Assembly: GCA_002269645.1 (NCBI GenBank)
Contig: NIVC01000616.1
Location: forward strand, 372,001 to 436,000
DNA: 64,000 bases
Direction: 5' to 3'
Source of the DNA: Macrostomum lignano
Lineage: Eukaryota
Shown: piece after piece, positions 4,000 through 48,939 of the stretch
How positions within the stretch are numbered: position 1 is the first letter of the stretch
How the letters are laid out: each line of letters starts with the position of its first letter
Made by a program: the position numbers and the translations under genes
Notes under the pieces: model-generated
What the model saw: only the letters and a program-made list of their open reading frames with translations
Database searches by the model: none
What the model was told of the DNA's origin: nothing

Positions 4000-13175
<9,176 letters not shown>

Positions 13176-19704: not shown

Positions 19705-19740
19705 CCGTTCAAGGATTAGCGGAATGGGCGTCCGCGCCTT

Positions 19741-20345
<605 letters not shown>

Positions 20346-21197: not shown

Positions 21198-22030
21198 ATG
21201 CAGTCAAACATCATCATCTGGATAAGTTTCCTCTGCGGTCTCGCAGCTCTTCTGGCTGTCGCAGCTGCGGAGGTGCCCAGGCCGGCTGTCCAGTTCACCG
21301 CGGCCAGGACGGGCAGCGCTGTCGCTCCGCCAGAGTTTCTATCGCAGCCCGGACTCAGCGAGCGCAGCTGCGGCTTCATGTGCAGCCACAAGCCGGGCTG
21401 CTTCGGCTTCTACTGGCTGCTCGGAGCGTGTCGGCTGTTCGACCTGCAGGCGTTTTACGATGCCAGCGCCTGGGTCAGCACCGGCAAGTGCGACGTCTTC
21501 GTGCTGGGTGCGTTTCTGGTGCTTTCGCTCACTTAGGTTCTTTTTTGTTAATATAACAACTGCTTCTGTAAACTCATTGATTGTATCTTATGAGTATAGA
21601 TACATTTATTGTCTCTCGATCAGATTTCAAGAAGCTGCCGGTTGCGGACTGCAGCCAGAGCTCAACCAGTCCGACATGGTTCTACCCATGCAACAGAGCC
21701 ATCGACGGTAACACGAGCCAGTCTCTGTGGTCCGACTCCTGCTCTCACACTCAGTTCAATGCTAGCGAGTGGTGGGAGGCCGGCTTCACAGCTCCGTCTC
21801 TCGTGTCCTTCGTCACCATCCACAACAGGCAGGACTGCTGCGCTGAGAGGCTCAACAAGTTCGACCTGCTTGTTGACGGGTCCGTGTGCAATCAGGTGAG
21901 GCTCAGCGCTCCGTTCTCCGTGGCCAACTTCACCTGCGGCGCTTTCGGCTCTCGGGTCCGAGTTGTGGCTCGCAGCGACCCGCCACAGGCTCTGACAATC
22001 TGCGAGTTCATGGCCTACGGCTTCTTCTGA
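21198..22030 (+). CDS. Secreted PAN/Apple + F-type (fucose-binding) lectin, FTL1; exons 21198..21507, 21624..22030
   Basis: Signal peptide; C-x3-C-x5-C-x2-F...C module; phase-1 GT..AG intron; F-type lectin domain with AIDGN, CSHT...WW, HNRQDCCAERL (H-x26-RxD-x4-R type motif) and terminal LTICEFMAYG. Confidence 0.85.
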
Positions 22031-27439: not shown

Positions 27440-28473
27440 ATGTCCCTCAAGAACTCTGCTGTCATTGCCAGTGCAGTCGCTTGCACTCTGCTGGTCCTCG
27501 TATCCGGTGCGGTCGCTCAGTTCACCCGCATCGGCTGCTTCAAAGATGGCCGATCGAGGGATCTGAACGCAGCCTCCATCAGCAGCAGGGAGATGTCGTA
27601 CGAGTTTTGCAGCAGCTTCTGCTCTCAGAGGGGCTTGCCATTCTTTGGCGTGCAGTACAGGTCTTATTGCTTCTGCGGCTCTTCCTACGGGCGGTACGGT
27701 GTGGCCGCGGAGAGCGACTGCCGAGGCTCCTGCACTGGCAACCCTGCGCAGAGGTGCGGCGGCACCTGGCGGAACTCCGTGTTCGCTTTAGTCTACGGTC
27801 GTGAGTTCGATTTCGTTGTATACATTTTGACTGTATTTTTTAAAACCTATGGATTTGGTCCTTGACGACTCCTTAGGGGGTCGCTTTTCAAATTACAACC
27901 AAAACAACAAAATGCGTTGTCAGCCAGTCAAGCGAGTCTTGAGAGGCCAAGACAATGTCCACACAAGGGCCTGGGCGCGAACATTGGCCGCACCGCTGGC
28001 AGTGTCCGGGGCGCCGGCATCAGCCACCACGAAACGCCGAAATGGTCTCAAATTGCGAAGACTCAATTTTCACATTAGATTCGAATAAAACTCTATGAAA
28101 CAGACGTTCGCCGGTTTGGAATTTAGAAATTGTACAGTGATCCCTATTACGTGCAAACAAGTATATACTTCAGGTTTCTTGTATACAAAAAATTCTGCCT
28201 ACTGCAAACTTCATATCTGAATAACTCCCTGCTTCAGGCAGCAACTACTTCACTCCGACGCAGCGACCCGGCCCAGCCGTCCCAACTACTGGTTCATCGC
28301 TCTGTACACAAGCTGCCAGATCGGCTGTTGACTGCCTCCTGCTGTGTGCGGCCGAATCCGGTTGCCAGGCTGTAATTTTCCAATCGCACCAGCGACTCTG
28401 CCACCGGCTTAAGTCCGCCTACACTCCTGTCAGCCTGACTGGCATCCCCGGAGACTATTTCATCCGCAACTGA
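27440..28473 (+). CDS. Secreted WSC + PAN/Apple protein (WSC-A); exons 27440..27800, 28238..28473
   Basis: Signal peptide; WSC domain (IGCFKD..RDL..MSYEFCSSFC..FGVQY..CFCG..DC..CTGN..CGGTWRNSVF). The phase-1 GT..AG intron joins an exon encoding SAVDCLLLCAAESGCQAVIFQSHQRLC...DYFIRN*. Confidence 0.85.
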
Positions 28474-28738
28474 GCTCTGGAGAGCGCGATCGAATTACAC
28501 TTGCGAGTAGGAAATACTCACCAAAATCAAACAGGTCTTGTCTTGACGCGTCTCTTTTAGGAAGTGAGGAAGTGAGGAATGGAAATTATATTTATTTACT
28601 GTTCAACCATTCCTATCCAGCTATAGATTACAAGCGCATAATCCAATGATCCGCATTCGTGAAATTCATTTGAACATTGTTGAACGCTATTTAGCTCGTA
28701 AAAACGAATAAATACGATACGTCTATCTAAGAACCTTA

Positions 28739-29010
28739 GGGGTTGCAGCCTAGTGGTCAGAGCATCGGACTTACGACTTGAAGGTCGGGGGTTCGATTAC
28801 CGATCCCACTGGAACAACTTGTGTTCTTGAGCAAAAGACACTTGACTCTGCATTGCTTCAGTTCACCCAGCTGTAAAATGGGTGCCAGCATTAGCTGGGG
28901 TAATTGAGGGTCCTTGGACTGAACAGCCGTACGCAGCCTTCAGATGCGCCACGCAATAGCTGCGGCTGGGCTGTCGGTTCCAATCGAGTATTATTATTTA
29001 TTATTATTAT
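28739..29010 (+). mobile_element. tRNA-derived CORE-type SINE with (TTA)n tail
   Basis: A box CAGCCTAGTGG, B box GGTTCGATTAC, CORE segment, ATT-repeat tail. Confidence 0.8.
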
Positions 29011-29789
29011 CTAAGAAATACACGATTCCATCATCGAATAAGTTGTGCCCACCTAAGGAATGTTTCCACAGAATTACGTGCAACTACCTAAAAAAATATT
29101 GACACAGAAGCCCTCAGCCGCTCTAGAATAACTTTGAGTATAGGCATCAACAGAAAAATTTGGCTGTGGGCACTGTTGCTTAGGGGATCAACACACAGTT
29201 TTTTCTCCCATTTGCCTTGAATCAACAAATCGTCAACAGATTTATTGACATTCGTTGGGGTCGTTATCCAAGTTTCTTTTTCCACAGCTTCGCATTCTGC
29301 ACTGTATATGCACAAGATCTATAGAATAATGGCTCGTGTGACTTAGCCATTGTGGCATTAAGCTCCAGACAATGCCTGGAAACAATTGCTTTGTTGACAC
29401 TGTTAAGCAATCTTGAGATCAACTATACGCTAACGCGATTCGGATAACTTTTCACCCGTCAGGTACTCAGGTTTGCTTGTTTCCAAGCTGATGCGACTGC
29501 TTTTTTCAATGTGAAAAGCGCCAAATCATTATTGCACAGCCAGTGAAAGCAGGGGGTACAACAAGGATCACTTCGAAGGCAGTTCAGTAAGTTGCTCAAG
29601 GAACTTACACGTAACTACCAAACTACCGACCAAGGTTTGCCTGGCGACTTGATTCTTGTTTGAGAAGGTGCGCCACGAAAACGAAGCCACTTTTAAAATT
29701 ACACCGATCGAAAATTCAAGATTGAGTTCTTTCAGCATTACAGGTAAAGACATCAATAATTCATTTTTCTGAACTCAAATCATATTTCA

Positions 29790-30111
29790 TGAATAATAAT
29801 ACTAATAAATAATTAATTGATTACACCTGTCCCAATTGGGCCAGATGTGCAACCGACAGCTCAGCCGCAACTATTTGCGCGGCGCATCTGAAGGCTGCGT
29901 ACGGCTGTTCAGTTCAAGGACTGCGGGGGTCGCCACACACACCCTGAATTACCCCAGATAATGCTGGCACCCATTTTACAGCTGGGTGAACTGAAGCAAT
30001 GCAGAGTCAAGTGTCTTGCTCATGGACACAAATTGTCCCAGTGGGATCGAGAATCGAACCCCCAACCTACAAGTCGTGAGTCCGACGCTCTAACCACTAG
30101 GCTGCAACCCC
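29790..30111 (-). mobile_element. tRNA-derived CORE-type SINE
   Basis: Reverse-complement homolog of the copy at 28739. Confidence 0.8.
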
Positions 30112-30404
30112 GTTTTGTCTTTAATGCTTCGATTAGATCAGATTATCAACAATGCTGCAACTACAATTGTTAATTTTTTCGTTTCATTGTTCATTTTTTT
30201 TCATTTTTGACCTCTACAAAGGGACAGAACGGTGTAAGTTAAATAGCTTTTGAGTAAAAGAGACGCCAGTGCGGCTGAGCTGTCGGTTGCACATCTGGCC
30301 CAATTGGGACAGGTGTAATCAATTAATTATTTATTAGTATTATTATTCATGAAATATGGTTTTGCAAGGAAAAATTCACCTTATTACTTTATAAAGAAAT
30401 TTTT

Positions 30405-31525
30405 TTCGGGAGAGAAGGAAGGCATGGGGAAGATGGGAGAGAGGGAAGGAAAGAATGGGGAAGATGGGAGAGAGAGAAGGAAAGCATGGGGAAGATGGGA
30501 GAGAGGGAAGGAAAGAATGGGGAAGATGGGAGAGAGAGAAGGAAAGCATGGGGAAGATGGGAGAGAGGGAAGAAAAGAATGGGGAGGATGGGATGGAAGA
30601 GAAAAAAAGGAAAGAGTGGGGAAGACGGGAGAGAGAGAAGGAAAGCATGGGGAAGATGTGTCGAGAAAAAATACTAAATTAAAGACTAGAGAGTTACTTG
30701 GAGTTAAATTGAATCTAAGATAAGCCAGTAAGTGGGCGCAGGGCCCAAACAAGTATATTTATACCAGACATTAACTTAGGGGGTTTGAATTGCAGATAAT
30801 AAAGAGAGGGGGTGGAGTGCACGACTAAATAGAGAGGCGAGAATGGAGAACCAATCAGAAGGCAGCAAGGGAGAGAGAGATAAGAATAACAAGATTGAGC
30901 TAGACACAGAGAGAGAGAAAACAGTAAACAGAGACAAGTGAAGGTGAACTAAAGAAATGACTAGGAAAGTCGCGACAAGATGGGAGAGAGGGAAGGAAAG
31001 AATGGGGAGGATGGGAGAGAAAAAAAGGAAAGAGTGGGTAAAACAGGAGAGAGAGAAGGAAAGCATGGGGAAGATGGGAGAGAGGGAAGGAAAGCATGGG
31101 GAGGATGGGAGAGAGGGAAGGAAAGAATGGGGAGGATGGGAGAGAGAGAAGGAAAGCATGGGGAAGATGGGAGAGAGGGAAGAAAAGAATGGGGAGGATG
31201 GGAGAGAGAGAAGGAAAGCATGGGGAGGATGGGAGAGAGGGAAGGAAAGCATGGGGAGGATGGGAGAGAGAGAAGGAAAGCATGGGGAAGATGGGAGAGA
31301 GGGAAGGAAAGAATGGGGAGGATTGGGAGAGAAAAAAGGAAGAGTGGGGAAGACGGGAGAGAGAGAAGGAAAGCATGGGGAAGATGGGAGAGAGGGAAGA
31401 AAAGAATGGGGAGGATGGGAGAAAGAGAAGGAAAGCATGGGGAAGATGGGAGAGAGGGAAGAAAAGAATGGGGAGGATGGGAGAGAGAGAAGGAAAGCAT
31501 CGGGAAGATGGGAGAGAGAGAAGGA
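30405..31525. repeat. About 31-bp purine-only repeat (GGGAGAGAGGGAAGGAAAGCATGGGGAAGAT) in two blocks, ~30405..30660 and ~30975..31525
   Basis: Direct reading. Confidence 0.9.
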
Positions 31526-31599
31526 AAGAATCGCACGAGAAGAGCCAGCGCACTCTCATGAGGAGGGAAATGCTAAAATGCTGTGGCTCTCAGCATGGT

Positions 31600-34500
31600 A
31601 AGGGTTCAAGATAGAATCGCCCTGTCAAACATCAAACACTCATGGGGGAATTGCTGAGATATCATGGCTTATGTTTGGAATCTCTGAAATTCTGTAGCTT
31701 ATAGGGGCTGCTGAAATGCCAAAGGTCAATTGGGAGTTCTTAATGATCTGAGAGAGAGTCTTCGAATGCAGCCTCGCTCTGCATGCAGTGGGCTGCAGTC
31801 AGCTTCACGGCCCATCTTCACCGCCTCTGAGAGAGGCATCACTATTGAAAGCAAGAGCTATTTGGTTGTCATGGAGACCGCAGCTACTGAATAATTCAGA
31901 TTCGGGGCTGATATATTGGGCTCGCATAATTGCTTGTATTGGGTGACTGCGGACTAATTCTGAAAATTCTGAGAGATCACGGAACAGTCAGTTCAACTGG
32001 TGAGTCTGTTGAGCATGAAGCATGAGCTGGGATTCCGTCCCCTCCCTCCACCCTCTCCTTCTGCCCTCGCCCTCCTCCCTCCGCCCTCGCCCTCCTCCAT
32101 CCGCCTTTTCCCTCCTCCCTCCGCCCTCGCCCTCCTCCCTCTCCCTCCTCCCTCCGCCCTCTCCTTTCTCCCTCCGCCCTCGCCCTCCTGGGCGTCGTCG
32201 GCGCCATCGCTGTGGATGCGGTCACGATCGCGTGCCAGAGCTTCATAGGTGCGGCTTTTCAGCCTAGGCTTGGTGTTTCGCAGGGCTACCTGCACCGCAG
32301 GGACGCTCGGGTCAAGTCTGAGCACTCGTTCCCTTAGGCGTGCCGCCCTCTCGGACGCGATAAAAGAAAGTGGTGCAAGCCCGGCCAGTTGTAGAACGGA
32401 ACGGGCGTTGGTTGGCATGATGCAGCCCGTGATCAGCCTCGCACACGCGTTCTGTTGCTGCTCAATGCCTCGCCTAATGGAGGGGGCGGCGCCGCACAAC
32501 CAGGTGCCTGCGGCGTACTCGGCCACAGCACGGATGCTGCTGATGTAGGCTGTTCGGATAGTATGTAAGTCTACATCTCCTGGGAGATGTCGGCGATGAG
32601 CTCCTCCGTGGAGCGCCCCCGTCGGAAGCCCGCCTGGCTGACGGTCAGCCGACCGGAGGCTTCCAGAGCGTAACGGAGGCGCTGGAGGACCAAACGTTCT
32701 GCGAGCTTTGCCACGCAGCTGGTGAGGGTGAGTGGACGATAGGATTCTGGCTTGCTGGCGTCCTTCCCTTTCTTGGGAATCGGGATGATGGTAGCCTTCC
32801 TCCATTGCCACGGGCACTTGCCTTCCAGCCAGGACCGATTAATGAGCTCGAGGATTCTCTTGTCTGTGGACGGCGGTAGATGCTTCAACATGTCATTACT
32901 AACGCCGTCCTGACCGGGGGCCTTCCCGGATTTCAGAGCCCGGACGGCGCTCCGGTACTCCGTAGGGTTGAAAGGTTGACAGATTCCCTGGCGTTTGCCG
33001 GTTTTGCAGCAGTGAGCGCACCGCTTCATGGGCCTTTTTGTTGATCGACCTGTCTTCTGGACGGTTTGGCACTCTGGAGACCGCACTATAGATCTGGCAA
33101 AACAGGTTTGCTTTTTCCAATTTAGTTCGCGCCGGTCTGCTGGGCGCGGTGCCACCCGTCTGGTGCCTGGTAATTGATGTGCTGCTAGCGGGGGTGCGCC
33201 CTTCCCCCTCTCATGTTCTTCAGCAGGCGGAAAAGGTCGCTGTTAACGTCCAGCTGAGCTGCCTTCTCGTTCCAGGATTTAGTCTTTTGCCTTCGGATGG
33301 TGGACCTGACTCGATTTCTGGCCGATTTGAAGGCTGCAATGTTGGAGTCTGACAGCTCAGCTTCAGCCGTCCGGCGCGCCTCTTTGCAAGCCCTAGAGGC
33401 TTTCTCGCAGTCTTCGGTCCAGAAAAGTTTGGCCCTCGGGAGTGTCCCTTTAGGGATGTTGTAGCTCGCCGCCTTCAGGATATCGCTACAAATGAGGGCG
33501 TGAACTTGTTCGGTCGCTACACCGCCCGTCGGGTATCGCTCCCTTTCGGCATCGATTTCGGCGAGCTCCTGTTTAAAGCCGTTCCAATCCGCCTTTCGAT
33601 AGCTCCATTTACCAGTCCGGGGGCGACGCTGCTTGGTAGTTCGCTTGCGGATGGAGCTAAGCTGGAACGTGATGGGGAGATGGTCAGAGCTCATGTCGCT
33701 CTGGGTCGTCCAACTATCCGCGACGCTTCTCAACAGATTACTACTGGTCCAGGTGATGTCCGGCGATGATAGAGCGCCTGTCCCCGGGTTCGTGCGGGTG
33801 TGGCGTTCACCGTTTGCGAGTTTCAGGTTCCTCGCGTTGGCCCAAGCTTCCACCCTGCGGCCCCTGTCGTCTTCATCTTGGTGGCTGTCCCAACTCCAGT
33901 GGGCGTTAAAGTCGCCCCCGAAAATGATACCCTGGGCGTCCGGTATGAGGTTTAGCGGAGGGTGCTAGGTCTCGCCTCTCTGTTCGCTGGTTGGTGGTGC
34001 GTAGACTGAGACCAGTGTGATGGGCTTCGAGTCCTTAAGGTGAACGGTGGCTGCCGTGACGTCCAGCATGCCGCGCTCCGCGTCACTTGGCGGCGGTTTG
34101 CTGTCGACGGTTATGTCCGAGCGGGTGAAAATCATCGCCCGGGTTGGTCGGGTATTTCGGGTCTTTCGGGTCTGGAGGTGGCGGCGGTGGCGAGAGCGGC
34201 TCCGGGGGAGGCGTTGGTGGGGATGGCGGTCGGTCCGGGGGTGTACAAGAGTTACACTGTTCCACTTTGAAGGCGCTAATCCACCTGTTGCTGCGACCCA
34301 GGCCGCTACATGACAGGTGACACCAGTCGCTGCAAACGTTGCAGCGGACCGAGCACTGCCGTCCTTTAATTTGGTTGCCGCACTTACAGCACCACCCAGG
34401 TTGTTTGCTTGGAGGATGCTGGGCCAGTCGCTCGTGCTGTCATCGTCGGTACCACTGCTGTAGCAGGCGCCGGCGCTGTCGCTGCCGTGGATGCGGGTGC

Positions 34501-34950
34501 TTGGATTTTTGCGTCTGCTGTTGCTGTTGCTGTGCTGTCCGCCTGGTTCGGGCCCGGCGCTGTCCAGGGCTCGTTCCTGCGGACGCAACCGGTGCGACCC
34601 GATTTGCATCCGGGGCACCATTCGGTGCGGTCCTCCGGCCAGCGCTTCCGGCATCGCGGTCTGGTGAGGCGGCGTCCGCCACATCTTGTCCACGGTGTCG
34701 GACAGGTGTTCGGGCTAGCGCTGCTTCCGGGCGATCTCTCGGCTAGCTCGGGGCCCCGCTGGGCGGCGTCCTTATGGAGGCCGTCGCACCTAGTGGCCAC
34801 GCAGTAGCCGTCCGGTGGGTTAAAGGGTTGATCCGCCCGAAGCTTCGTCTCTTGAAGCAGGATAGCCGTGGGTTGGTTGGTCTGGAGCCACTTGGCCAGC
34901 TTGGTGAGACGAGCCCGAAGGCCGTTGCAATTGAAGGCCGTTGCAATCGC
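31600..34950 (-). mobile_element. Defective I-group/Ingi-like LINE (LINE-A): disrupted APE, RT with core deleted, decayed 3' end
   Basis: APE motifs FNCNGL, LQETKL, VSVYAPP, GDFNAH, SPDIT, SDHLPI. RT N-terminus KAPGQDG, WRKATIIPIPKKGK, SYRPLTLTSCVAKLAER, QAGFRRGRST joins directly to the post-RT NACARLITG region. Frameshifts and stops present. Confidence 0.9.
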
Positions 34951-36352
34951 TCTTTCTTTCTTTCTTTCTACCCGGCTCGCCGTTAGCACTGCGGTGCTAA
35001 GATAGGCGGGGGCCAGCGCCCCATGCTGCGAAGGAATGTGAAAATGCGACCGTGTCGGTACTCCAGCGGGTCGTCGCTGCCGAAAAAACGGAGGCGGGCG
35101 GCGTCCCCGCGAGGGCAGTGGTAGATGAGGTGCTCAACGGTATCAGAAGCGCCGCAATCGGGGCAGGCGTCAGCTTCCTGGAGGCCGATGCGGGCGCGAG
35201 TGGCGGCGCAGAGCGTGCTGACGCCAGCTCGGAGCTGATTCATGGCGACGAGCTCCGCCCTGCTGCGGCCTGGGTCGGTCGGATGAAGAGGGGGGCCCAG
35301 GACCTGGGCGTCCAGGGCGCGACGGTCGCGGCGGATGGCGGCGCGCGCTGTCTGGAGGCTGATGGCGGCCGTATCTTTTGGTAGCATGGCAGCTTCGGCG
35401 GCGGCGGTGTCAGCTGCGTCGTTGCCGGCTATTCCCGCATGGCCTGGCACCCAAATGAAGGTAACGGAGGCGCTGCTGTTGGCCAGGAGGTGCCAGCAGG
35501 CGTCGCCGGTGGCGGTGGTTTGCCAGAGCGGGCCGCTTTCGAGGGCCGTCAGAGCGCTCAGGCTGTCGGTGGCAACCGCGACCGAGCGGGGCGGTGCAGG
35601 TTGGTCCGCGAGGAAGTGTTCCAGCGCTGCATGGATGCCAACCAGCTCAGCCTGGAAGCTGCTGCAGAGCCTGCCGGCCGGCCTGCGGATGACGGTGGTG
35701 GTGTCACCGGCATAGATCACAGCCGCTACGCCGCCGTTCTCGGTTCCGCCGGCGGCCGACCCATCGGTCCAGGCGATGGCGTCATAGTCGGCAACTCTGG
35801 CGAGGCCGGCGGCCGCGGCTTCGGCCCTGGCCGCAGCATGGGCGGAACGGTGAACGCGTGTCGCGGCGAGGTCGAAGATCGTAGGGCCCCCGTCGTGGGG
35901 TCTCCAGGGGGCGGGTCTGGGCAGGTTTTCCCTGCCAAAGCGCTGCAGGGTGGTGCAGATGGGCAGCTCGGCGGCGGCGCGGCGCCAGCACCCTCGGAAC
36001 TCGCGAGAGCGGTCGAGGTCGCGGCGGTCGTCAAGGGCCTCGCCTCCCGCTAGGGCCGGGTCGAACCTTCGATTCTTAAGCCGTGGTCGTGTTGGCCGCA
36101 TTGCCGTGGTGAAGGCCGGGCAGTCCGACGGCAGCCTGGTGATGCGCTCGAAAAGGGATGCGGCTCGCTCGATGGCGAAATTGCCCACGGGCGGCAGGTT
36201 CGCCAGCCGGAGTGTCCGGTGGTTGGGGGTGGTGCTACAGCAGCCGGTGATGAGGCGCGCGCAGATGGTTTGCTGTTGTTCAATGGTACGCCTGGTGCTC
36301 GGCGCCGCACAGGTTAGCCAAATGGCGCCACCGTAATCAGCGCACCCCCGGA
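34951..36352 (-). mobile_element. 5'-truncated LINE (LINE-B) with open C-terminal ORF, RNase H, CCHC knuckle and (GAAA)n tail
   Basis: ICARLITG; RNase H AWTDGS, SSFQAELVGI, ATDSLSAL, WVPGHAGIAGNDAAD; CPDC..TVEHLIYHCP. Tail at about 34952..34969. Confidence 0.9.
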
Positions 36353-36376
36353 GCTTTTGGTGAGTGGTGAGTGGCT

Positions 36377-37408
36377 ATGAGGTTGTAATCGCTCTGCTGC
36401 TGCTGCTGCTGCTGGCTGCAGTGCTGCATCATGTGACTGAATCCGCCGCCAACTCCGGGCAGCTGTGGCAGTCGAGCCGCGAGAGCCTCTCCGACTACGA
36501 GGCCGTGAGGTCGCTGCCATCCCAAAGCGAGTCCTCGTGCGCGGTGCGTGCCAACATCGACACCGCTGTGCACCTGATGCCGTTCAACGCCAGCTCCGGC
36601 CTGTGCGCTCACTTCAGGTGTCGCCTGGGCCTGAGCCACTGCAGGAAGTGCCGCAATGCGAACAAGGGATTTCAGCGAGTGCGGGTGAGTTCCTCAGTTA
36701 GATATGTCAGCGTTAATGCAAAGTAGAAAAACTGGCACACCTGTTGTGTCACCTTGCAGACAGCCGGCAGTGACTGCTGGACCACCGTGCAGCACAGGGT
36801 GTCCGGCTCAGTGGACTTTTACCGCAACTGGACTCAGTACCAGAGCGAGTTCGGCGAGGGACCCGACGGAAACTACTGGATCGGTGAGGACCAAAAAGTT
36901 GTGACCTATTAGAGCTATTGTACAGACTAAAATATCTGCATGTTCAAATGCTCAATGCTAATGGCTTGGCAATTGCTATTTCAGGTCTGAACGCTCTTCA
37001 CGAAATCACGCAGCATGGAAGTCACAAGGTGCGGTTTCTCATGAAAGCCTGGAACGGGTCTGAGCACTGGGCTGAATACTCCAGCTTCTCCGTGGGTCCC
37101 GAGTCCGACAACTACCGGCTGAGCGTTTCCGGCTTCTCCGGCAGCGCCGGCATCGGCGACTGCTTTTCTGCTCTAAACGGGCAGCAGTTCACCACAAAGG
37201 ACGCCGATCACGACACTCACTCTGGTAACTGCGCAGTGATTTATCACGGAGCCTGGTGGTTCACCGCCTGCCACTGCACGCACCCGAATGGGGAGTACAG
37301 AGATGCCTCTAAGGCCACTGGAGATCCCTATGCTCAGGGTGTCATTTGGAGCTTGTACTTCGGCTACTACTATACTCACTGAAGGAGTTCGAGATGCTGG
37401 TTTTGTAA
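36377..37408 (+). pseudogene. FReD-B, probable pseudogene paralog of FReD-A; exons ~36377..36684, 36760..36883, 36985..37408
   Basis: Exons 2-3 are nearly identical to FReD-A. ATG AGG TTG TAA is out of frame with the signal peptide, a second frameshift (TACTACTATACTCAC) removes the terminal strand, and LINE-B abuts the start. Confidence 0.7.
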
Positions 37409-37647
37409 CAAGACGCTGGAATAACTATTGATTAATTGTCAAACTGCAATATTTAGATACTTAAGGGCATCCAAGATAGCGGAATGAATTGATTTACACT
37501 ACCAGAGTCCAAATCTATCTCTTTGGAAAGATTTTTCTAAACAAATTCCAACAAACTGAAAAACACTAATCTTGATGAAAATACAAAGGTGACAAAAATA
37601 TCATCAAATACTGTGAGCAAATGCAGTAATCGTTCTGCTCAATTCTT

Positions 37648-37905
37648 TATTGATGTGCAATCGACAGCTCAACCGCAGCTATTGCGCGGCGAATCTCGTA
37701 TGCCTGTTCAGTCCAAGGACTGAGGGTCGCCACTCCCCTCAAATAACATGTCAATACTGGCACCCATTTTACAGCTGCGTGAGCTGAAGCAATGCAGAGT
37801 TAAGTGTCTTGCTCAAGGACACAAGTTCTTTAAGTGGGATCGGGAATCGAGCCCCCGACATTCAAGTCTTGAGTCCGACGCTTTAACCACTAGGCTACAA
37901 CCCCC
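37648..37905 (-). mobile_element. CORE-type SINE (duplicate of the 26170 copy)
   Basis: Nearly identical to 26170..26432, in the same flanking context. Confidence 0.8.
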
Positions 37906-38230
37906 ACTAGGCTACAACCCCACTAGGCTACAACCCCCATTAGGCTACAACCCCTCACTAGGCTACAACCCCTCACTAGGCTACAACCCCCACTGGGCTA
38001 CAACCCCCACTAGTCTACAACCCCCACTGGGCTACAACCCCCACTAGGCTACAACCCCCACTGGGCTACAACCCCCACTAGGCTACAACCCACACTAGGC
38101 TACAACCCCCACTGGGCTACAACCCCCACTAGGCTACAACCCCCACTAGGCTACAACCCCCACTAGGCTACAACCCCCACTAGGCTACAACCCCCTACTA
38201 GTCTACAACTCCGCACTAGGCTACAACCTA
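37888..38230. repeat. SINE-head-derived 16-17-bp minisatellite, about 20 copies
   Basis: Same unit as 26416..27180. Confidence 0.9.
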
Positions 38231-40779: not shown

Positions 40780-41728
40780 ATGCCGATTTCCTTTCCGGTT
40801 TGTGTGCTCGCGCTCTGTGGCTCAGTGTCTCTGCTGGTTGCCTCTGCTGAAGTGCTCACCAAGTCTGATCGATTCGATCGAGTCAACAAGAGCAGCGCCA
40901 TCGCTCCGCCGGAGTTTCTCGTGCAGCCCAGACCGAACAAGATCAGCTGTGGTTTCCTGTGCAGCCGCAGGCCGGGCTGCTTCGGCTTCTACTGGCTGCT
41001 CGGAGCGTGTCGGCTGTTCGACCTGCAGGCGTTCCTCAATGCCAGCGCCTGGGTCAGCACCGGCTCGTGCGATGTCTACGTGCTGGGTAAATTTAGACGA
41101 GATGTTGCAACTCTGACATTTATTGCTTATCTTCACAAATTCCTCTGCATTTATCTGTTCTCACAGCTTTCATAATTTCAGACATCAAAAAGCTGAAGTT
41201 TTTGAACTGCAGCCAGAGCTCCAACTACTATGCGGACAGGTATCTTTGCGACCGAGCATTCGATGGCGACGCCAGATCCAGCAGCTCGAATGACATGTGC
41301 ACCCACACAAAGTCCAGTGCTAACGAGTGGTGGGAGGCCGGCCTGGCTGTTCCATCGTTTGTGTCCTTCGTCACCATCCACAACAGGCAGGACTGCTGCG
41401 CTGAGAGGCTCAACAAGTTCGACCTGCTTGTTGACGGGTCCGTGTGCAACCAGGTGAGGCTCTTGACTTAGCTGCAGGGGGCGTCCGGCGGATGCAGCGA
41501 GGAGGCGGAGGAGACCGCCCATTCCGCTAGCCCCTGGCGACCAACGACTTCCGTTGAAGTGGTGTCGCTCAGGGGGACCCGTCGGTCTCGCAGGTGAGGC
41601 TCAGCGCTCCGTTCTCCGTGGCCAACTTCACCTGCGGCGCTTTCGGCTCTCGGGTTCGAGTTGTGGCTCGCAGCGACCCGCCACAGGCTCTGACAATCTG
41701 CGAGTTCATCGCGTTTGGGTTCTACTGA
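40780..41728 (+). CDS. Secreted PAN/Apple + F-type lectin, FTL3; exons 40780..41086, 41182..41453, 41594..41728 if the new 140-nt intron is spliced
   Basis: Paralog of FTL1 with long near-identical stretches. CTHT..HNRQDCCAERL intact. Interrupted by the insertion at 41463..41590. Confidence 0.75.
41463..41590. mobile_element. 128-bp insertion with 12-bp target-site duplication (possibly a short 5'-truncated retroelement in reverse orientation)
   Basis: CAGGTGAGGCTC at 41451..41462 and 41591..41602; FTL1 has a single copy and no insert at the equivalent site (near 21893). Confidence 0.85.
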
Positions 41729-43695
41729 AGACGGGACTTTACTCAAGCTGAAGTGCCTGAGACTCGACCGGAGTTCTCTGCACACTGGTTGTTAATTTTA
41801 CATTTCAGCAGACCGTTTCCGACATCATGGCAAAGTAAAATTGTATTGTTAAGGTAGATGCGACAGCAGATTTATGAAAGAACCTGTCTACCCAAGCAAC
41901 CTTTTTCCCGTCTTCAGTTGCTACTTGTTATTTACTGAATAACATGTCTTAAGCAGGTGAGTTGATAATAAATTCAAAAGGAAATCAATTGTGCCTGGAA
42001 ATTCGAGGGTCAGGTTATTTCTTAGAGTCGAAACATAAGCCATTAGAAAGGTCTCTCAGTTTTTGCGATTCAGTTCAGTTCTAGTCTCAGTTCTAGAATC
42101 GAATGCAACCCACTCCATCGAATTGCCGTTGCCAAGAATTGTTGGAAAAACAAGTTGAGTGCTATTTGGGCATGTAGTAAAATAACAAAAAACTGAATAA
42201 AACACAGACTTCGAGGCCTGATAGTAGTTAGGCAAGTTCTTTTGAAGCTTATTTTCATTTTTGACATTGAATTACACCCAGTTTTATGTGCAGGACAAAA
42301 ACTTTGTAATTGTCCTTGGGTACTCATTTGAACTATTTTGACATCTTGAAGTTTTCTGGCACATAGATAACTCAGACCTGCATTGATGTGAGAAAACAGA
42401 TTAAGAATGTCTAAAATTTGATTTTGGGTGAAGAAATCGCGCATGTTTACTACCAACACAGTTATGTAGGGTTATAGCTACTCACTCAAAAAAGTTTACT
42501 CAGTGTTACCCATGTAACAAAGTTGACAAAGTCCCGCCCCTTTTTAGGACTTCCGTTAGAAAGCGCTAAAACGCTATTAAACAAAACTTTTTTTACGAAC
42601 TGGTGGCTTGGCAAACTTGGCTGCGCATTCAGCAGCTGACGGCATTGGTGCAACGTTACAGTAAAGCTTAAGCCGAATAAAAAATAGACAGACAGAGAAC
42701 ATGAGCTCTAGCGGAGAATGTGAGGCTCGTCGCAATGCCAATATTTTTTCCTGGGCTCAACCTCACACCCCACCCGCAGCCACCGTTCTGAGATGCGCCT
42801 GCAGCACCTGCACTTGTGTGCGATGCATTTTCAGGTGGTGAGGAGGGCGTCTTCCGCCGCAGACTGCCTTCTCCCTCTCTCTCCTGTCTCTTCTGCACTC
42901 CTCTCTGTGAGCCGTTCAAACAGATCAACTCAGCCACTTCAAATTCACCCTCCTCCCTTCAATATTTTTTCATTCTCTTAGCTCATAGATAGCTCAGTCC
43001 CAGCCAGCTCAGGCGCCAGACCGGTTCTGGCGAGCGGTGCCGCAGTCTCTATCCAGTGCGCTTGTTGGCTGGGAGGGCGGAGATGAAGGGAGGAGAGGCT
43101 GTGAGCTGGATGAAGAGAGCGAGCGAGAGAGAGATACTCCTGCAGCGGTGTATGAAGTAGAAACTGACACTGCCACTATACCGTTGCTGAGTTTGAGCAG
43201 TTGCTTCAGGAACGAGAGAGACAGAGAGACAGGGGGTGGAGAGGACACAGGCTGTCTGCTCAGTGACAATGCGGCGAGAAATGTAGAGACAGACTAAAAC
43301 AGTCTACGACCACCCAAACCACTGAAAGATTTATGCCAGCCGCTCCCTCAGAACTGCTCTCTAAAAACTCTTAAACATACTCAGTTTATTCTCATTCAAG
43401 CACTGACTCTCCCTCTTCCCCTCCTCCCTCTTCCCACTCAGCATCCCGCTGTCGCAAGCGCCATCGACCCGCGCCCAGACAGAGGCCCTCCTGAGCTGGT
43501 TTTGAGCGGCTGAAAAGGAAGCGCAGCCGGTAAAAAGAGAATTGAATAAAGGGGAGGAAAGGCGCAAACCGGGGGAACTTTCCAATCAGCTCATCCCACC
43601 TGTTGTCATAGCTGCATCAGCATCGAGACTGCACATTTTTCCGGTAAAAGTAAATTCTTCTGCAACGGGAAAAAAGAGAAGCCGCTGTAGCCGCC

Positions 43696-44451
43696 ATGAG
43701 CCAGCTGGAAGCGCTGCCTACTGAGAGGCGCCAGCACCAGCCAAGAGTACTGCCGCCAGCGCCCCTGAACGACTGGGACCGGTACAAGCCCACCGACCGC
43801 AGCGCGTGGTGGCGGGACCAGCTCAACCGCTACCCGGCAGTCGGCCAGTACGAGCCGCGCGAGGTCAGCTCCATACAGCGAGTCAACTATCCTTCGTCTA
43901 CCTTCAAGAGCTCCGGCCGGCAGCGCAACCTTGAAGCGGCAACGGGCCTGGGCGGCGGTGGAGGCAGCGGAGTGCCGCCTGGAGCCTACAGCCACCGCAG
44001 CTTCACTGACGAGATGAGCAAAGACATTCGCAGCTACGGTTTCCGCAACTCGAAGAAATCCTCGCTGGACGCACTGACCGAAGGTCTGGTAGATCGACAG
44101 CTGTCGAACCTGACACCCGGGCAGTACAACGTGGAGACCTACCACAGCATCCGCGTCGACCCCGAGCCAGCCAGAGGCTCCTGCTTCAAGTCGCGATCCC
44201 GTCGCGTCATCAAGGAGTTCGAGCCGCGCGAAGGACCGCCTCCAGGTGCGTACGATTCGAGTCGGAGCACGCTGAGCCAGCAGGGCGTGCGCTCATCGTT
44301 CCGTTCCAGCTGCCCACGGTTTGTCTCATCCTACAACAAGGTCCCGGCGCCGGGCTCCTACGACAAGTCCTACCAGACTCCTATGTCGGCTGGAATGATG
44401 CGGATGGGCCGACAGCATGGACTGTTCTTCAGCACCGCCTTCTACCCCTGA
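43696..44451 (+). CDS. STPG4: Sperm-tail PG-rich repeat protein, STPG4-like, intronless
   Basis: PGxY repeats (PAVGQY, TPGQYNV, EGPPPGAYD, PAPGSYD), N-terminal AWWR and C-terminal RMGRQHGLFF are colinear with my recollection of vertebrate STPG4 (GWWR...SPGQYNV...EGPGPG...KMGQEHSLFF). Confidence 0.75.
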   Translation: MSQLEALPTERRQHQPRVLPPAPLNDWDRYKPTDRSAWWRDQLNRYPAVGQYEPREVSSIQRVNYPSSTFKSSGRQRNLEAATGLGGGGGSGVPPGAYSHRSFTDEMSKDIRSYGFRNSKKSSLDALTEGLVDRQLSNLTPGQYNVETYHSIRVDPEPARGSCFKSRSRRVIKEFEPREGPPPGAYDSSRSTLSQQGVRSSFRSSCPRFVSSYNKVPAPGSYDKSYQTPMSAGMMRMGRQHGLFFSTAFYP

Positions 44452-44534: not shown

Positions 44535-45016
44535 CTTTGAAGAGACAGCCCATTCCTTTGATAAGCGCCGACATCTCATCCTTTTGAGTTGTTCCTTTGA
44601 TGAGCCGACATCCTGTTCCCTTAAGCTGTTCGATCCTTTGATGAGCCGACATCCCGTTCCCTTAAGTTGTTCCTTTGATGAGCCGACATCCCGTTCCCTT
44701 AAGTTGTTCGATCCTTTGATGAGCCGACACCCCGTTCCCTTAAGTTGTTCGATCCTTTGATGAGCCGCCATCCCGTTCCCTTAAGTTGTTCGATCCTTTG
44801 ATGAGCCGACATCCCGTTCCCTTAAGTTGTTCGATCCTTTGATGAGCCGCCATCCCGTTCCCTTAAGTTGTTCGATCCTTTGATGAGCCGCCATCCCGTT
44901 CCCTTAAGTTGTTCGATCCTTTGATGAGCCGACATCCCGTTCCCTTAAGCTGTTCGATCCTTTGATGAGCCGACATCCCGTCCCTTTGAGTTGTTCCTTT
45001 GATGAGCCACCATCCC
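44535..45016. repeat. 41-bp minisatellite (CTTTGATGAGCCGACATCCCGTTCCCTTAAGTTGTTCGATC), about 11 copies
   Basis: Direct reading; unrelated to the 41-bp repeat at 2070. Confidence 0.9.
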
Positions 45017-45600
45017 GCCGTTTTGATAGATGAGCAGACAATGTGACCCCTTAGTGTTTTCGGAGGCCGGTTGAAGTTATTTGTTTACCAAATTGAAGCT
45101 TTTTAACTTACGCGTTCATCTAAACGGGGCCTCAAAGATTTTTGGCTCCTCTACTTTGCTGTCTTTGATTCTTCTGCTTCAAATTAATTGCCTGTTCTTT
45201 CCGCCACAGTAAGACAAGGATTTTCTGCTTTGCTCAATTATAGCTCTCCGATCTCCTGATACTGCATAGCAGCGTAACCTGTGTATTTTGGTTGCACACA
45301 GATATTCTCATTGAAATTTTTTTAACAAGAATGTAGATTAAAAGTACGCGCAACTGAACTATGCTTTGTTCTATTTTTATTAAATAGATAGATATTTTTT
45401 ATTTTTACTTTTTGCAAAACAATTTTGCCGTAATTAATTTCTGTTACCAAAGTGAAAATTCAGCATATAGGGCAGTTCGCATGCAAAACATACAATTAAT
45501 TATTTACACTCAGATGAATGATATGCTACTGAAGATTTATCAAACCAGTAGTGTGGTTAGTGCATATTAAAACAAACTTAGTTTAACTGCACAGCCATCC

Positions 45601-45707: not shown

Positions 45708-46309
45708 CAAAAAAGACGGGCGCCAACGCGAACCAAGAGACAGGGGGCGCTCAGGGTTGCGATCCCCTCAAATTAAAATTGCAACGCACAACCCCGAACA
45801 TTTTTTCCACTCCCCGAATAACACAGACTTGCCGTAAAACGTTGCACACCGAATGTAGCCATGCACTATTCGAAGCTTTCGTCGAATAGTTCGTGAAGGA
45901 ATTTCCTGGGCATTGCAAATTTCGCAGGTGCTTCCGCAGGTGCAGTTCAACATTGCGCTGAAAGAAAATCATTTTTGCTGCAACCAAGTGGCCATGCATT
46001 TCTGCGTAAAAGCGAATGATAAACCGGGAAGGTTACAAAGTGAACTTTTCGATTGCAACAGAATGCTCTCGCACCACCGCTGAGGCTACTAAGGGGATGC
46101 GGCACAAGTGGGTGAAATGTGAACGCAATATAGGGTTAGTAGGGTTGTACCAGTTCCCACTGTGGAGAGGCACGAGCGAAGTTTGAAAGAGATGGGATTC
46201 AAGATAGAATAGAAGTCATGTACCGTATTTATTTATATAAAATATAATTACAGAGGATTGGCTGCAACTGGGTTACTGTAGCTGATATGCCTTTACACTC
46301 AACGACTTC

Positions 46310-47935
46310 ACACTCATTTTGCGCTGCAGTTACTCATTTCAGCATCAAACTCACTCCTTTTAGCGCCACTGTCACTCATTTTAGCATCAAACTCACTCAT
46401 TTTAGCGCCACTGTCACTCATTTTAGCATCAAACTCACTCATTTCAGCGCCACTGTCACTCATTTTAGCATCAAACTCACTCATTTCAGCGCCACTGTCA
46501 CTCATTTTAGCATCAAACTCACTCATTTCAGCGCCACTGTCACTCATTTTAGCATCAAACTCACTCATTTCAGCGCCACTGTCACTCATTTTAGCATCAA
46601 ACTCACTCATTTCAGCGCCACTGTCACTCATTTTAGCATCAAACTCACTCATTTCAGCGCCACTGTCACTCATTTTAGCATCAAACTCACTCATTTCAGC
46701 GCCACTGTCACTCATTTTAGCATCAAACTCACTCATTTCAGCGCCACTGTCACTCATTTTAGCATCAAACTCACTCATTTCAGCGCCACTGTCACTCATT
46801 TCAGCATCAAACTCACTCATTTCAGCGCCACTGTCACTCATTTTAGCGCCACTGTCACTCATTTCAGCGCCACTGTCACTCATTTTAGCGCCACTGTCAC
46901 TCATTTTAGCGCCACTGTCACTCATTTTAGCGCCACTGTCACTCATTTTAGCACCAAACTCACTCATTTCAGCATCAAACTCACTCATTTTAGCGCCACT
47001 GTCACTCATTTCAGCACCAAACTCACTCATTTCAGCATCAAACTCACTCATTTCAGCATCAAACTCACTCATTTCAGCATCAAACTCACTCATTTCAGCA
47101 TCAAACTCACTCATTTTAGCATCAAACTCACTCATTTTACCATCAAACTCACTTATTTCAGCATCAAACTCACTCATTTTAGCATCAAACTCACTCATTT
47201 TAGCATCAAACTCACTCATTTCAGCATCAAACTCACTCATTTCAGCGCCACTGTCACTCATTTTAGCGCCACTGTCACTCATTTTAGCACCAAACTCACT
47301 CATTTCAGCATCAAACTCACTCATTTTAGCGCCACTGTCACTCATTTCAGCACCAAACTCACTCATTTCAGCATCAAACTCACTCATTTCAGCATCAAAC
47401 TCACTCATTTCAGCATCAAACTCACTCATTTTAGCATCAAACTCACTCATTTTACCATCAAACTCACTTATTTCAGCATCAAACTCACTCATTTTAGCAT
47501 CAAACTCACTCATTTCAGCATCAAACTCACTCATTTCAGCATCAAACTCACTCATTTTAGCATCAAACTCACTCATTTCAGCATCAAACTCACTCATTTC
47601 AGCATCAAACTCACTCATTTCAGCATCAAACTCACTCATTTCAGCATCAAACTCACTCATTTCAGCATCAAACTCACTCATTTTAGCGCCACTGTCACTC
47701 ATTTTAGCGCCAAACTTATTCATTTTAGCGTCGCAATCACTCACTTTAGCACCACAGTCACTCATTTTAGCGCCACAGCCACTCATTTTAGCACCAAACT
47801 CACTCATTTTAGCGTCGCAATCACTCACTTTAGCGCCACGGTCACTCATTTTAGCGCCACTGTCACTCATTTCAGCACCAAACTCACTCATTTTAGCGTC
47901 GCAATCACTCACTTTAGCGCCACGGTCACTCATTT
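46310..47935. repeat. 21-bp two-monomer satellite (TCACTCATTTYAGCATCAAAC / TCACTCATTTYAGCGCCACTG)
   Basis: Alternating and block-wise arrangement of two monomers. Confidence 0.95.
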
Positions 47936-48939
47936 AATTTTAATAGAGTTAATTTTAGAAATATACCGAAGGCCGGTCACTGGGCGGTGGGGGGGGGGGT
48001 GACAGAGCATTGGCATCAAAGCAAATGCGTTGCCTCGAGCTGGCAATAAATTTGCTTTCAGCTATCCAAATATTTTGATTAGAGCGAACTTTGCAAACGA
48101 TAAGGGATATAGTGGGGTAACAGGTCCATCCCATGGGTATAGGCCATTGGGTAGGCAGTCAGCTTGGGAGGGCCAGATTAACCGTTGCTCGTACCGTTTA
48201 GAAGGCTCGGGTTTCTGTGCAATGCACTTTTACTCGTTTCTAAGAAAGAATTCCATTTTGCTACTGACCAGCCGTGTGTCCAGAAGTGTTCCTCTCTGGC
48301 AGTTAATCACAGGCTCTGTTTTATTTATAGATAGACTGCTGGAGATTCTTTGACTAGAGAGGAAGTGAAGCCAGTGGAAGCTGAGGATGAGGCTGGGTGG
48401 GCGCAGGCAAGGAAATCTAGATCTAGCAGCTGGAATACCAACTCTTAAGTGGAGGCGCTCGGACCCGGACCGTAGTAGCCTAGTAGGCTGGCGCGATGAT
48501 AACGAAAAATGGGAGTCCGCCTGGGGACCGGGGGCAGGCAGAGACCAATAACAGACAACAGACAAGGCCTGCTAGGGCTCGTTCCCCCTAGAAGGGTATG
48601 AGCGAGCAGGTAAGAAAAATGGGGAAAAGAGGAGAGAGAATATGGGGCATATGAAAAATCACATACTATTGTACATTGTCTTTTTGATACTAAAAACATA
48701 CGGGTACAAATGTACGTTGAATTTCCAGTTAGTCATCGTAACTGCAGAGTCTAAAGCTGTCTTTGTGCACACAAAAGACAGAGCTGAGGCAGTGAGGCAC
48801 ATGTTTTCATGATTTCAAGTTCCCTGCTTTTTCTTAGCTCTTAGTCTTTACTCTTACTAAGATTATAAGATAAAATACTTTTTCGAATGCCATACGAACA
48901 CACCTGCCGGGCCATGTCAGGTTTAGCCGACTATTCAAA

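What the first reader, a model, noticed from the sequence alone, without database searches (positions are those of the whole stretch)
41451..41602. Candidate newborn intron: insertion whose target-site duplication supplies both splice sites in lectin FTL3
Seen: a 128-bp insert (41463..41590) sits between two copies of CAGGTGAGGCTC. The left copy reads CAG|GTGAG (strong donor) and the right copy reads ...GGTCTCGCAG|GTG (acceptor). Removing 41454..41593 (140 nt, GT..AG, phase 0) restores exactly AAC CAG GTG AGG CTC AGC, as in paralog FTL1. Paralogs FTL1 and FTL2 have no intron here, and FTL1 is near-identical on both sides, so the event is very recent. Unspliced, the ORF stops after three codons (TTG ACT TAG) and truncates the lectin. 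Established: duplication of an AG|GT proto-splice site by an insertion is a recognised route to precise intron gain, as with introner elements. Inference, weak: the insert may be a reversed 5'-truncated LINE end, since it shares the 14-mer TAGCGGAATGGGCG with 19717..19730 and ends in a TAAG-like tail.
Basis: partly seen in the sequence, partly recalled or inferred. Interest (0 to 1): 0.85.

Follow-up and report, generated by a model that had tools for sequence, protein, structure and literature searches.

The report
Truncated LINE insertion, possibly spliceable, in lectin
One of three near-identical copies of a flatworm (Macrostomum lignano) fucose-lectin gene has a 128-bp retrotransposon tail in its last exon, and the 12 bases duplicated on insertion happen to read as splice signals, so it may be a newborn intron, but splicing is untested and its 3' signals look weak.

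Summary
A 128-bp insert (41463-41590) lies between two perfect copies of CAGGTGAGGCTC. Removing 41454-41593 restores the reading frame of an F-type lectin gene.

New evidence:
- The window is Macrostomum lignano.
- Two other contigs of the same assembly carry this gene at about 99.3% identity with an exact empty site. The insertion is therefore very recent and copy-specific.
- The insert is the last 40 codons, the stop codon and 5 nt of ORF2 of an RNase H-bearing LINE, antisense to the lectin and 5'-truncated. Six M. lignano gene models carry the same tail at 83-100% amino-acid identity.
- The donor CAG|GTGAGGCT is identical to a real intron donor in the neighbouring cullin gene.
- The acceptor side is poor: 45% pyrimidines, no branch-point motif, 67% GC, and a competing AG 21 nt upstream.
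- No expression or splicing evidence could be obtained.

Verdict: this is a solid dead-on-arrival LINE insertion, and its target-site duplication makes it a plausible proto-intron. Recruitment of both splice sites from an AGGT-containing duplication is already known in dinoflagellate introner-like elements. I rate it a new member of a known kind, of moderate interest, and easy to test.

The parts
40780..41086 (+). FTL3 exon 1: ATG, signal peptide and Cys-rich N-terminal region. It ends in phase 1 at the donor ctgg|gtaaat.
   Evidence: ORF and alignment to FTL1 and to the L003/L004 copies. The translated full-length product is 237 aa.
41087..41181 (+). FTL3 intron 1: 95 nt, GC 0.34, gtaaat...tttcag. 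This is an ordinary intron.
   Evidence: Reading frame continuity and conservation of position in FTL1.
41182..41453 (+). FTL3 exon 2, part a: F-type lectin domain including the fucose-binding motif H-x26-R-x-D-x4-R (CTHT...HNRQDCCAER).
   Evidence: Pfam PF22633 at 3e-09. The motif was read directly from the translation.
41451..41462 (+). Left copy of the 12-bp target-site duplication CAGGTGAGGCTC. It supplies the candidate donor CAG|GTGAGG (GT at 41454-41455).
   Evidence: The donor is identical to the real cullin intron donor cag|GTGAGGCT.
41463..41590 (-). 5'-truncated 3' end of a non-LTR retrotransposon: the last 40 codons of ORF2, a TAA stop (41470-41468 on the - strand) and 5 nt. It is antisense to FTL3. 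Its premature in-frame TAG on the + strand is at 41469-41471.
   Evidence: phmmer and blastp against six M. lignano proteins at 83-100% identity. P0127 has RVT_1, RNase_H and then this tail at residues 662-699, matching 36/38.
41591..41602 (+). Right copy of the target-site duplication. Its CAG (41591-41593) is the candidate acceptor.
41454..41593 (+). Candidate new intron: 140 nt, phase 0, GT..AG, GC 0.67.
   Evidence: Removal restores the ORF. Features were compared with 7 real introns. The fold energy is -67 kcal/mol with z = -2.1. Splicing was not tested.
41594..41728 (+). FTL3 exon 2, part b: the C-terminal 44 codons of the lectin domain plus the TGA stop.
21893..21904 (+). Empty site in paralog FTL1: a single copy of the 12-mer.

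Best explanation
SHOWN:
- The window is Macrostomum lignano.
- FTL3 is a two-exon F-type (fucose-binding) lectin gene.
- In this copy only, the last exon carries the terminal 128 nt of a LINE whose ORF2 has RT, RNase H and a CCHC motif.
- The fragment is inserted antisense, is 5'-truncated, and is flanked by a perfect 12-bp target-site duplication.
- Two other copies of the locus in the same genome assembly, 99.3% identical, have the exact empty site.

INFERRED (mechanism):
- The insertion arose by target-primed reverse transcription.
- The + strand was nicked after ...GAGGCTC, between the bases now at 41462 and 41603.
- Its 3'-OH primed cDNA synthesis from the LINE RNA 3' end (...GCUAAGUCAA).
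- Reverse transcription aborted after 128 nt.
- A second nick 12 bp to the left, followed by fill-in, duplicated CAGGTGAGGCTC.

INFERRED (consequence):
- The target 12-mer encoded Q-V-R as CAG|GTGAGG. The insert is therefore bracketed by a consensus donor and a CAG acceptor, and their use would remove exactly 140 nt and restore the mRNA.
- I judge the most likely state to be a proto-intron. Unspliced transcripts encode a lectin truncated 44 residues short, which is probably non-functional. This would be tolerated because two intact-site copies exist.
- Precise splicing is possible but probably partial, because the acceptor side is weak.

My estimates:
- LINE/TPRT origin: 0.93.
- Precise splicing detectable, given transcription: about 0.45.
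- Majority of transcripts precisely spliced: about 0.2-0.25.
For: - Sequence and duplication.
- Species: the cullin ORF is 100% identical to BOX15_Mlig030544g1. The SHIPPO ORF is found exactly in 3 contigs of GCA_002269645.1.
- Empty sites: in L003 and L004, window 41462 and 41591 both map onto one 12-mer (locus 7898-7909), with 6 mismatches in 913 bp.
- LINE identity: six M. lignano proteins match different frames of the insert at 83-100%. All six are M. lignano entries.
- LINE architecture: P0127 has RVT_1 at 110-226, RNase_H at 414-543, and the insert at 662-699 in frame with ORF2.
- 3' terminus: flanks diverge immediately after ...LQLSQ in P0125, P0127 and P0129, so the insert's left end is the element's 3' terminus.
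- 5' truncation: P0126 and P0127 continue past the insert's right end, so that end is a truncation point.
- Donor: it is identical to a real cullin intron donor, and similar ...CGCAG|gtg acceptors are used by real introns.
- Weak 3' signals and competing AG.
- Assembly redundancy: the DV1 assembly holds 180 Mb of non-repeat duplicates at >=95% identity (PMC5730564).
Against: - No DNA copy of the full LINE could be retrieved, so the exact 3' terminus and any 5'-junction microhomology are inferred from protein-level matches only.
- There is no poly(A) or microsatellite tail.
- No transcript data were available. Splicing could equally be efficient (donor perfect; one real intron, cul6, has a pyrimidine tract of only 0.50) or absent.
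- FTL3 may be silent in all copies. It is not a called gene in L003, L004 or L005, and no protein at >=90% identity exists in the 5.8-billion-protein set.
- That the window is the third contig (510,635 bp) of the same assembly is an inference.
Confidence: 0.55

Rival explanations
1. True newborn intron. The 140 nt are removed precisely and efficiently by the spliceosome, using the two duplicated CAG|GT motifs, and this gene copy still makes full-length lectin.
For: - The donor CAG|GTGAGGCT is identical to a bona fide donor in the same window. The acceptor CGCAG|gtg resembles that of real cullin intron 5.
- The length of 140 nt is workable, the intron is phase 0, and the ORF is restored exactly.
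- No AG occurs in the last 20 nt before the acceptor.
- Only about 0.8% of random 12-bp duplications in this CDS would contain AGGTRAG. A surviving exon insertion at just such a site hints at survivorship through splicing.
- Duplicated AGGT has been shown experimentally to make a functional intron (PMC3265369, abstract).
Against: - Pyrimidine fraction is 0.45, against 0.50-0.80 in 7 real introns.
- No yUnAy motif lies within about 120 nt of the acceptor.
- GC is 0.67, above both flanking exon parts and all real introns seen.
- A competing AG at 41571-41572 would cause a frameshift.
- The predicted structure is stable and pairs the donor.
- There is no expression evidence.
- Two redundant empty copies weaken any selection argument.
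Confidence: 0.3
2. Filler-DNA capture during repair of a staggered double-strand break (the NHEJ model of intron gain proposed for Daphnia), rather than LINE-mediated target-primed reverse transcription.
For: - Short direct repeats flanking new introns are the signature of that model (PMC3020277, abstract).
- There is no poly(A) tail.
Against: - One end of the insert coincides with the LINE's own 3' terminus. Flanks of three other copies diverge exactly there.
- The other end is a 5' truncation.
- A 12-bp duplication is typical of LINE insertions. Random capture would not be expected to end at the element terminus.
Confidence: 0.05
3. Assembly artefact or chimeric long read: the insert does not exist in the animal's genome.
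For: - The assembly is PacBio-based and known to contain errors (PMC5730564).
- Only one of three copies carries the insert.
Against: An artefact would not create a perfect 12-bp duplication around a fragment ending at a LINE terminus. The flanks are otherwise collinear and carry their own SNPs.
Confidence: 0.03
4. Ancestral intron lost precisely from the other copies and paralogs.
For: Precise deletion between 12-bp direct repeats is mechanistically possible.
Against: - It would require independent precise loss in L003/L004, FTL1, FTL2 and the P0002 gene.
- The sequence is a young LINE tail, 100% identical at the protein level to another copy.
Confidence: 0.01

Closest known systems
Dead-on-arrival 5'-truncated LINE insertions made by target-primed reverse transcription
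   Same: The fragment ends at the element's 3' terminus and is truncated at the 5' side. It is flanked by a duplication of non-fixed length (12 bp), and empty sites exist in sister copies.
   Different: There is no poly(A) or simple-repeat tail. ORF2 appears to run to within 5 nt of the 3' end. The clade was not determined; an RNase H domain downstream of RT suggests an I/R1/LOA-like architecture.
Introner-like elements of Polarella glacialis, classes 13/14 (bioRxiv 10.1101/2020.10.14.339549)
   Same: Both splice sites are recruited from an AGGH/AGGT-containing target-site duplication, so excision restores the exon exactly. The position is phase 0.
   Different: Those are specialised, high-copy families with fixed 4-nt duplications that generated hundreds of introns. 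This is a one-off insertion of an ordinary LINE fragment in an animal, with no evidence of other intron-forming copies.
Introners derived from non-LTR retrotransposons (PMC12130899)
   Same: In both cases the intron sequence originates from a non-LTR retrotransposon.
   Different: Family-level propagation as introns has not been shown here.
Intron creation by duplication of an AGGT-containing segment (Rogers model; Hellsten et al. 2011, PMC3265369)
   Same: A duplicated AG|GT provides donor and acceptor, and splicing restores the original mRNA.
   Different: There the intron body is duplicated exon sequence. Here the duplicate is only 12 bp and the body is foreign (LINE) DNA.
DSB-repair-associated intron gain with short flanking repeats (Daphnia; PMC3020277)
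   Same: A young, polymorphic intron-like insertion is flanked by a short direct repeat.
   Different: Here the repeat is explained by LINE integration rather than NHEJ.

Membership tests
Non-LTR retrotransposon (LINE) insertion | Sequence homologous to a LINE, contiguous with its RT-containing ORF2 | tested here: met
   The reverse-strand frame 0 of the insert matches P0127 residues 662-699 (36/38), downstream of RVT_1 and RNase_H in the same reading frame. Five further M. lignano copies were found.
Non-LTR retrotransposon (LINE) insertion | Insert ends at the element's 3' terminus and is truncated at the 5' side | tested here: met
   Flanks of P0125, P0127 and P0129 diverge right after ...LQLSQ, which is the insert's end. 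P0126 and P0127 extend beyond the other end. This is protein-level evidence only.
Non-LTR retrotransposon (LINE) insertion | Target-site duplication and a matching empty site | tested here: met
   A 12-bp perfect duplication. Empty sites occur in L003, L004, FTL1 and FTL2.
Non-LTR retrotransposon (LINE) insertion | 3' poly(A) or simple-repeat tail (present in many but not all clades) | tested here: not met
   The element end reads ...CTGCAGCTAAGTCAA directly abutting the duplication. This feature is not required for all LINE clades.
Functional spliceosomal intron | GT..AG boundaries whose use preserves the reading frame | tested here: met
   Positions 41454-41593, 140 nt, phase 0; the ORF is restored.
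Functional spliceosomal intron | Donor matching the species' consensus | tested here: met
   cag|GTGAGGCT is identical to the donor of the cullin intron at 6464..4998.
Functional spliceosomal intron | Branch point and pyrimidine tract upstream of the acceptor | tested here: inconclusive
   Pyrimidine fraction is 0.45 against 0.50-0.80 in 7 real introns. There is no yUnAy near the 3' end, and a competing AG lies 21 nt upstream. The reference set is small.
Functional spliceosomal intron | Spliced junction observed in transcripts of this gene copy | not testable with these tools
   No RNA data were accessible. No similar protein is in the database.
Introner / introner-like element | Many near-identical copies that are themselves introns of unrelated genes | not tested
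   Other copies are known only as LINE tails inside chimeric gene models. There is no other copy in 64 kb plus about 110 kb of M. lignano DNA. A genome-wide search was not possible.
Introner / introner-like element | Element is a short non-autonomous unit specialised to carry or recruit splice signals | tested here: not met
   The insert is an arbitrary 5'-truncated piece of ORF2 coding sequence. Both core splice dinucleotides come from the host 12-mer.
F-type lectin (fucolectin / FTP domain) | F-type lectin fold and the H-x26-R-x-D-x4-R fucose-binding motif | tested here: met
   PF22633 scores above its cut-off. The closest proteins are M. lignano 'FTP domain-containing protein' entries. The motif was read from the translation.

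The most novel reading that the evidence does not exclude
The 140 nt are precisely spliced in vivo from the insert-bearing copy. This would be an intron birth caught in the act in an animal. An ordinary, non-specialised, dead-on-arrival LINE fragment would become an intron solely because its target-site duplication copied a CAG|GTGAGG proto-splice site. The event would still be polymorphic among gene copies in a transgenesis-capable laboratory flatworm.
Probability: 0.3. Interest if true: 0.75.

Novelty: new member of a known kind. Interest (0 to 1): 0.48.

Why it matters
How new spliceosomal introns arise in animals is poorly documented. A survey of 3,325 genomes found introners in only two animal groups (PMC9860276).

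If this copy is spliced, a routine LINE insertion with no specialised element would be shown to create a precise intron whenever its target-site duplication spans a proto-splice site. The locus offers a natural control: two near-isogenic empty copies in the same genome. The organism has public RNA-seq data and transgenesis.

If it is not spliced, this is an ordinary TE knockout of a redundant lectin copy.

Tried and rejected
- The 14-mer TAGCGGAATGGGCG at 19717-19730, cited as evidence for LINE origin, does not extend by one base. It sits beside a (TAG)n array, and about 0.05 such matches are expected by chance. I rejected it as evidence.
- A search of the window for other copies of the insert by DNA (word size 7) and by six-frame peptides found none.
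- The GC-rich retroelement at about 31.2-36.2 kb is not the source. It carries Exo_endo_phos_2, RVT_1 and RNase_H hits but is a different family: 26% amino-acid identity to P0127 and no DNA match.
- Rfam found nothing meaningful on either strand of 41300-41750, so an SINE or structured-RNA origin is not supported.
- No copy of the tail occurs in loci L001-L005.
The 571-aa ORF at 46287-48002, tried in order to reveal the window's own contig annotation, is not on record.
- TIRs or a DNA-transposon origin: the ends are not inverted repeats and 12 bp is atypical. I rejected this by inspection.
- An ancestral intron lost elsewhere was rejected (see rival explanations).

Full report
**1. Observation**

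- CAGGTGAGGCTC occurs at 41451-41462 and again at 41591-41602. The 128 bp between them (41463-41590, 67% GC) is unique in the window.
- The repeat is exactly 12 bp, because the bases just outside it differ.
- Removing 41454-41593 (140 nt, GT..AG, phase 0) gives a continuous ORF ...DGSVCNQVRLSAPFSVANF... to the TGA at 41726-41728.
- With the insert retained, the frame ends after L-T at the TAG at 41469-41471.

**2. The gene and the organism**

- The interrupted exon encodes an F-type lectin domain. Pfam PF22633 scores above its cut-off.
- The fucose-binding motif H-x26-R-x-D-x4-R (CTHT...HNRQDCCAER) is intact and lies upstream of the insert.
- The gene has two coding exons, 40780-41086 and 41182-41728, separated by a 95-nt AT-rich intron. 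It encodes a 237-aa secreted-type protein.
- Two paralogs are nearby: FTL1 (+, exon 21623-22027) and FTL2 (-, 23052-22660).
- The closest database proteins are Macrostomum lignano FTP-domain proteins at 56-58% identity.
- The cullin-1 gene in the window is 100% identical over the aligned part to M. lignano BOX15_Mlig030544g1.
- A 251-aa SHIPPO-repeat ORF at 43696-44451 is found exactly in three contigs of assembly GCA_002269645.1.
- The window is therefore M. lignano, most probably the third contig (510,635 bp) of that assembly. That last point is an inference.

**3. Empty sites**

- FTL1, FTL2 and the single-exon gene of P0002 are uninterrupted at this position. All have a CAG|GTR motif there, encoded by the conserved N-Q-V.
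- Contigs NIVC01002108.1 (L003) and NIVC01001020.1 (L004) carry the same FTL3 locus. Window 41462 and window 41591 both align onto a single 12-mer at locus 7898-7909.
- Over about 913 aligned bp around the gene, the window differs from each of them at only 6 positions (0.66%).
- The published description of this assembly reports 180 Mb of duplicated non-repetitive blocks at >=95% identity, attributed to extra large chromosomes in the sequenced DV1 line (PMC5730564). That fits three near-identical copies.
- The insertion is thus specific to one copy and very young.
FTL1 is 74% identical over exon 2 upstream of the site (90% in the last 165 bp) and 94-95% downstream.

**4. What the insert is**

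- Nothing in the window, in Rfam or in 110 kb of other M. lignano loci matches it.
- A phmmer search of its six reading frames against 1.84 billion representative proteins returned six hits. All six are M. lignano UniProt gene models.
- They match different frames of the insert at 83-100% identity.
- P0127 ('Reverse transcriptase domain-containing protein') has RVT_1 at residues 110-226, RNase_H at 414-543 and a CCHC motif near 596-624. In the same frame it then has ...RADFFPTVGGPRCR-RDRRVPLSDITSTEVIGRQGLAEWAVSSASSLHPPDAP. The segment after the hyphen matches reverse-strand frame 0 of the insert at 36/38 residues.
- In the window copy that frame stays open for 40 codons and ends at a TAA 5 nt before the insert's left end.
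- In P0125, P0127 and P0129 the sequence after ...LQLSQ (the very end of the insert) is unrelated from copy to copy. That end is therefore the element's 3' terminus.
- P0126 and P0127 continue into ORF2 beyond the other end, which is therefore a 5' truncation.
- The insert is thus the last 128 nt of an RNase H-bearing non-LTR retrotransposon, antisense to FTL3.
- One other copy (P0126) is identical over 37 residues, so the family has been active recently.
- The LINE-like element at 31.2-36.2 kb is a different family.

**5. Mechanism (inferred)**

A 3'-anchored, 5'-truncated fragment with a 12-bp duplication is the signature of target-primed reverse transcription. The likely steps are:
- a nick in the + strand after GAGGCTC;
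- priming on the LINE RNA 3' end;
- abortive cDNA synthesis after 128 nt;
- a second nick 12 bp to the left;
- fill-in that duplicated the 12-mer.

A repair-mediated capture of filler DNA is much less likely, because one end coincides with the element terminus.

**6. Is it an intron?**

In favour:
- The donor cag|GTGAGGCT is identical to the donor of a real cullin intron in this window (6464..4998). Real acceptors include ...CCCGCAG|gtg.
- The last 20 nt before the acceptor contain no other AG.

Against:
- GC content is 0.67. The flanking exon parts are 0.55 and 0.62, and seven real introns are 0.34-0.53.
- The pyrimidine fraction in the 20 nt before CAG is 0.45, against 0.50-0.80 in real introns.
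- No yUnAy branch-point motif lies within about 120 nt of the acceptor.
- An AG at 41571-41572 could compete and would shift the frame.
- The RNA is predicted to fold stably (-67 kcal/mol, z = -2.1), with the donor paired.

Other considerations:
- Only about 0.8% of random 12-bp duplications in this CDS would contain AGGTRAG. The configuration is either luck or weak survivorship evidence.
- The seven-intron reference set is small.

**7. Expression**

- FTL3 is not a called gene on L003, L004 or L005.
- No protein at >=90% identity to FTL1 or FTL3 exists in the 5.8-billion-protein collection.
- The GenBank annotation is a filtered 'coregenes' set that excludes transcripts overlapping repeats (PMC5730564), so this absence is weak evidence.
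- Splicing therefore remains untested.
- The proposed junction test has a trap. The spliced junction has the same sequence as mRNA from the two empty copies, so only reads linked to 41429T and 41656T (and 41356C) are diagnostic.

**8. Comparison with known systems**

- Recruitment of both splice sites from an AGGH target-site duplication is described for Polarella introner-like element classes 13 and 14 (bioRxiv 10.1101/2020.10.14.339549).
- Non-LTR retrotransposons account for about 5% of classified introner families (PMC12130899).
- Duplication of AGGT has been shown experimentally to create a functional intron (PMC3265369).
- This locus works like those cases but is not an introner. It is a single arbitrary LINE fragment with no sign of a specialised intron-forming family.
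- Introners have been found in only two animal groups (PMC9860276), so a verified case in a flatworm would be notable.

**9. Verdict**

- The structural observation and the LINE origin are firmly supported.
- 'Newborn intron' remains a plausible but unproven reading, with a weak acceptor side.
- It is a new member of a known kind, of moderate interest, and cheap to test.

Noticed in passing
window 18000-38000 vs L002/L003/L004: There is large structural variation among the three copies of the locus. Window ~27.1-37.9 kb, which includes the retroelement and tandem arrays, is absent from L004 and is bracketed in the window by a 1.5-kb direct duplication (25276-26760 vs 36748-38228, 96% identical). 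Window ~18.0-31.2 kb, which includes FTL1 and FTL2, is absent from the NIVC01002108.1 contig, where 17989 joins 31248.
   Followed up: partly
L004 near 7990 (window-equivalent 41683): The empty-site FTL3 copy on NIVC01001020.1 has a 1-bp deletion (the A of CGCCACAGG) that would frameshift the last ~15 codons. It is either a real second disabling mutation in another copy or a long-read indel error.
   Followed up: no
window 41182-41728 vs 21623-22030: Identity between FTL3 and FTL1 is mosaic: about 74% over the first part of exon 2, 90% just upstream of the insertion site and 94-95% downstream. This suggests gene conversion between the paralogs over the 3' half of the exon.
   Followed up: no
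window 31200-36200, - strand: A GC-rich (60-66%) retroelement remnant has Exo_endo_phos_2, RVT_1 and RNase_H hits in separate ORFs. The RNase H ORF lies upstream of the endonuclease/RT ORFs, so it is possibly nested or rearranged. It is also present in L002/L003 at 98% identity.
   Followed up: partly
window 7576-7887, + strand: A fragment 42% identical at the protein level to the CCHC/C-terminal region of the same kind of LINE ORF2 (P0127 residues 560-657) lies inside a cullin intron.
   Followed up: no
window 4003-13181, - strand: The cullin-1 gene has at least 6 introns of 450-1785 nt. Several are filled with long tandem arrays, for example 34-bp and 23-bp periodicities around 8.9-11.6 kb.
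   Followed up: partly
window 25476-25934 and ~36950-37400, + strand: Duplicated ORFs encode a fibrinogen C-terminal domain (PF00147, 1.6e-32). One of the LINE-tail-containing gene models (P0128) is also a fibrinogen-domain protein. This is probably coincidence.
   Followed up: no
window 26413-27179, 37887-38228, 30410-31528, 44593-45017: There are long minisatellite arrays: 17/18-bp CCACTAGGCTACAACCC units, a 31-bp purine-rich unit and a 41-bp unit. They account for the strong strand-composition skews in the window.
   Followed up: no
window 14000-16000: An AT-rich block (GC 0.27) lies between the cullin gene and the lectin cluster. It is only partly shared with L002.
   Followed up: no
P0125, P0126, P0128, P0130 (M. 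lignano UniProt entries): Several ML2-based gene models are chimeras that translate this LINE tail, in sense or antisense frames, as part of ion-channel, kinase or fibrinogen proteins. This is a caution for anyone using that proteome.
   Followed up: partly
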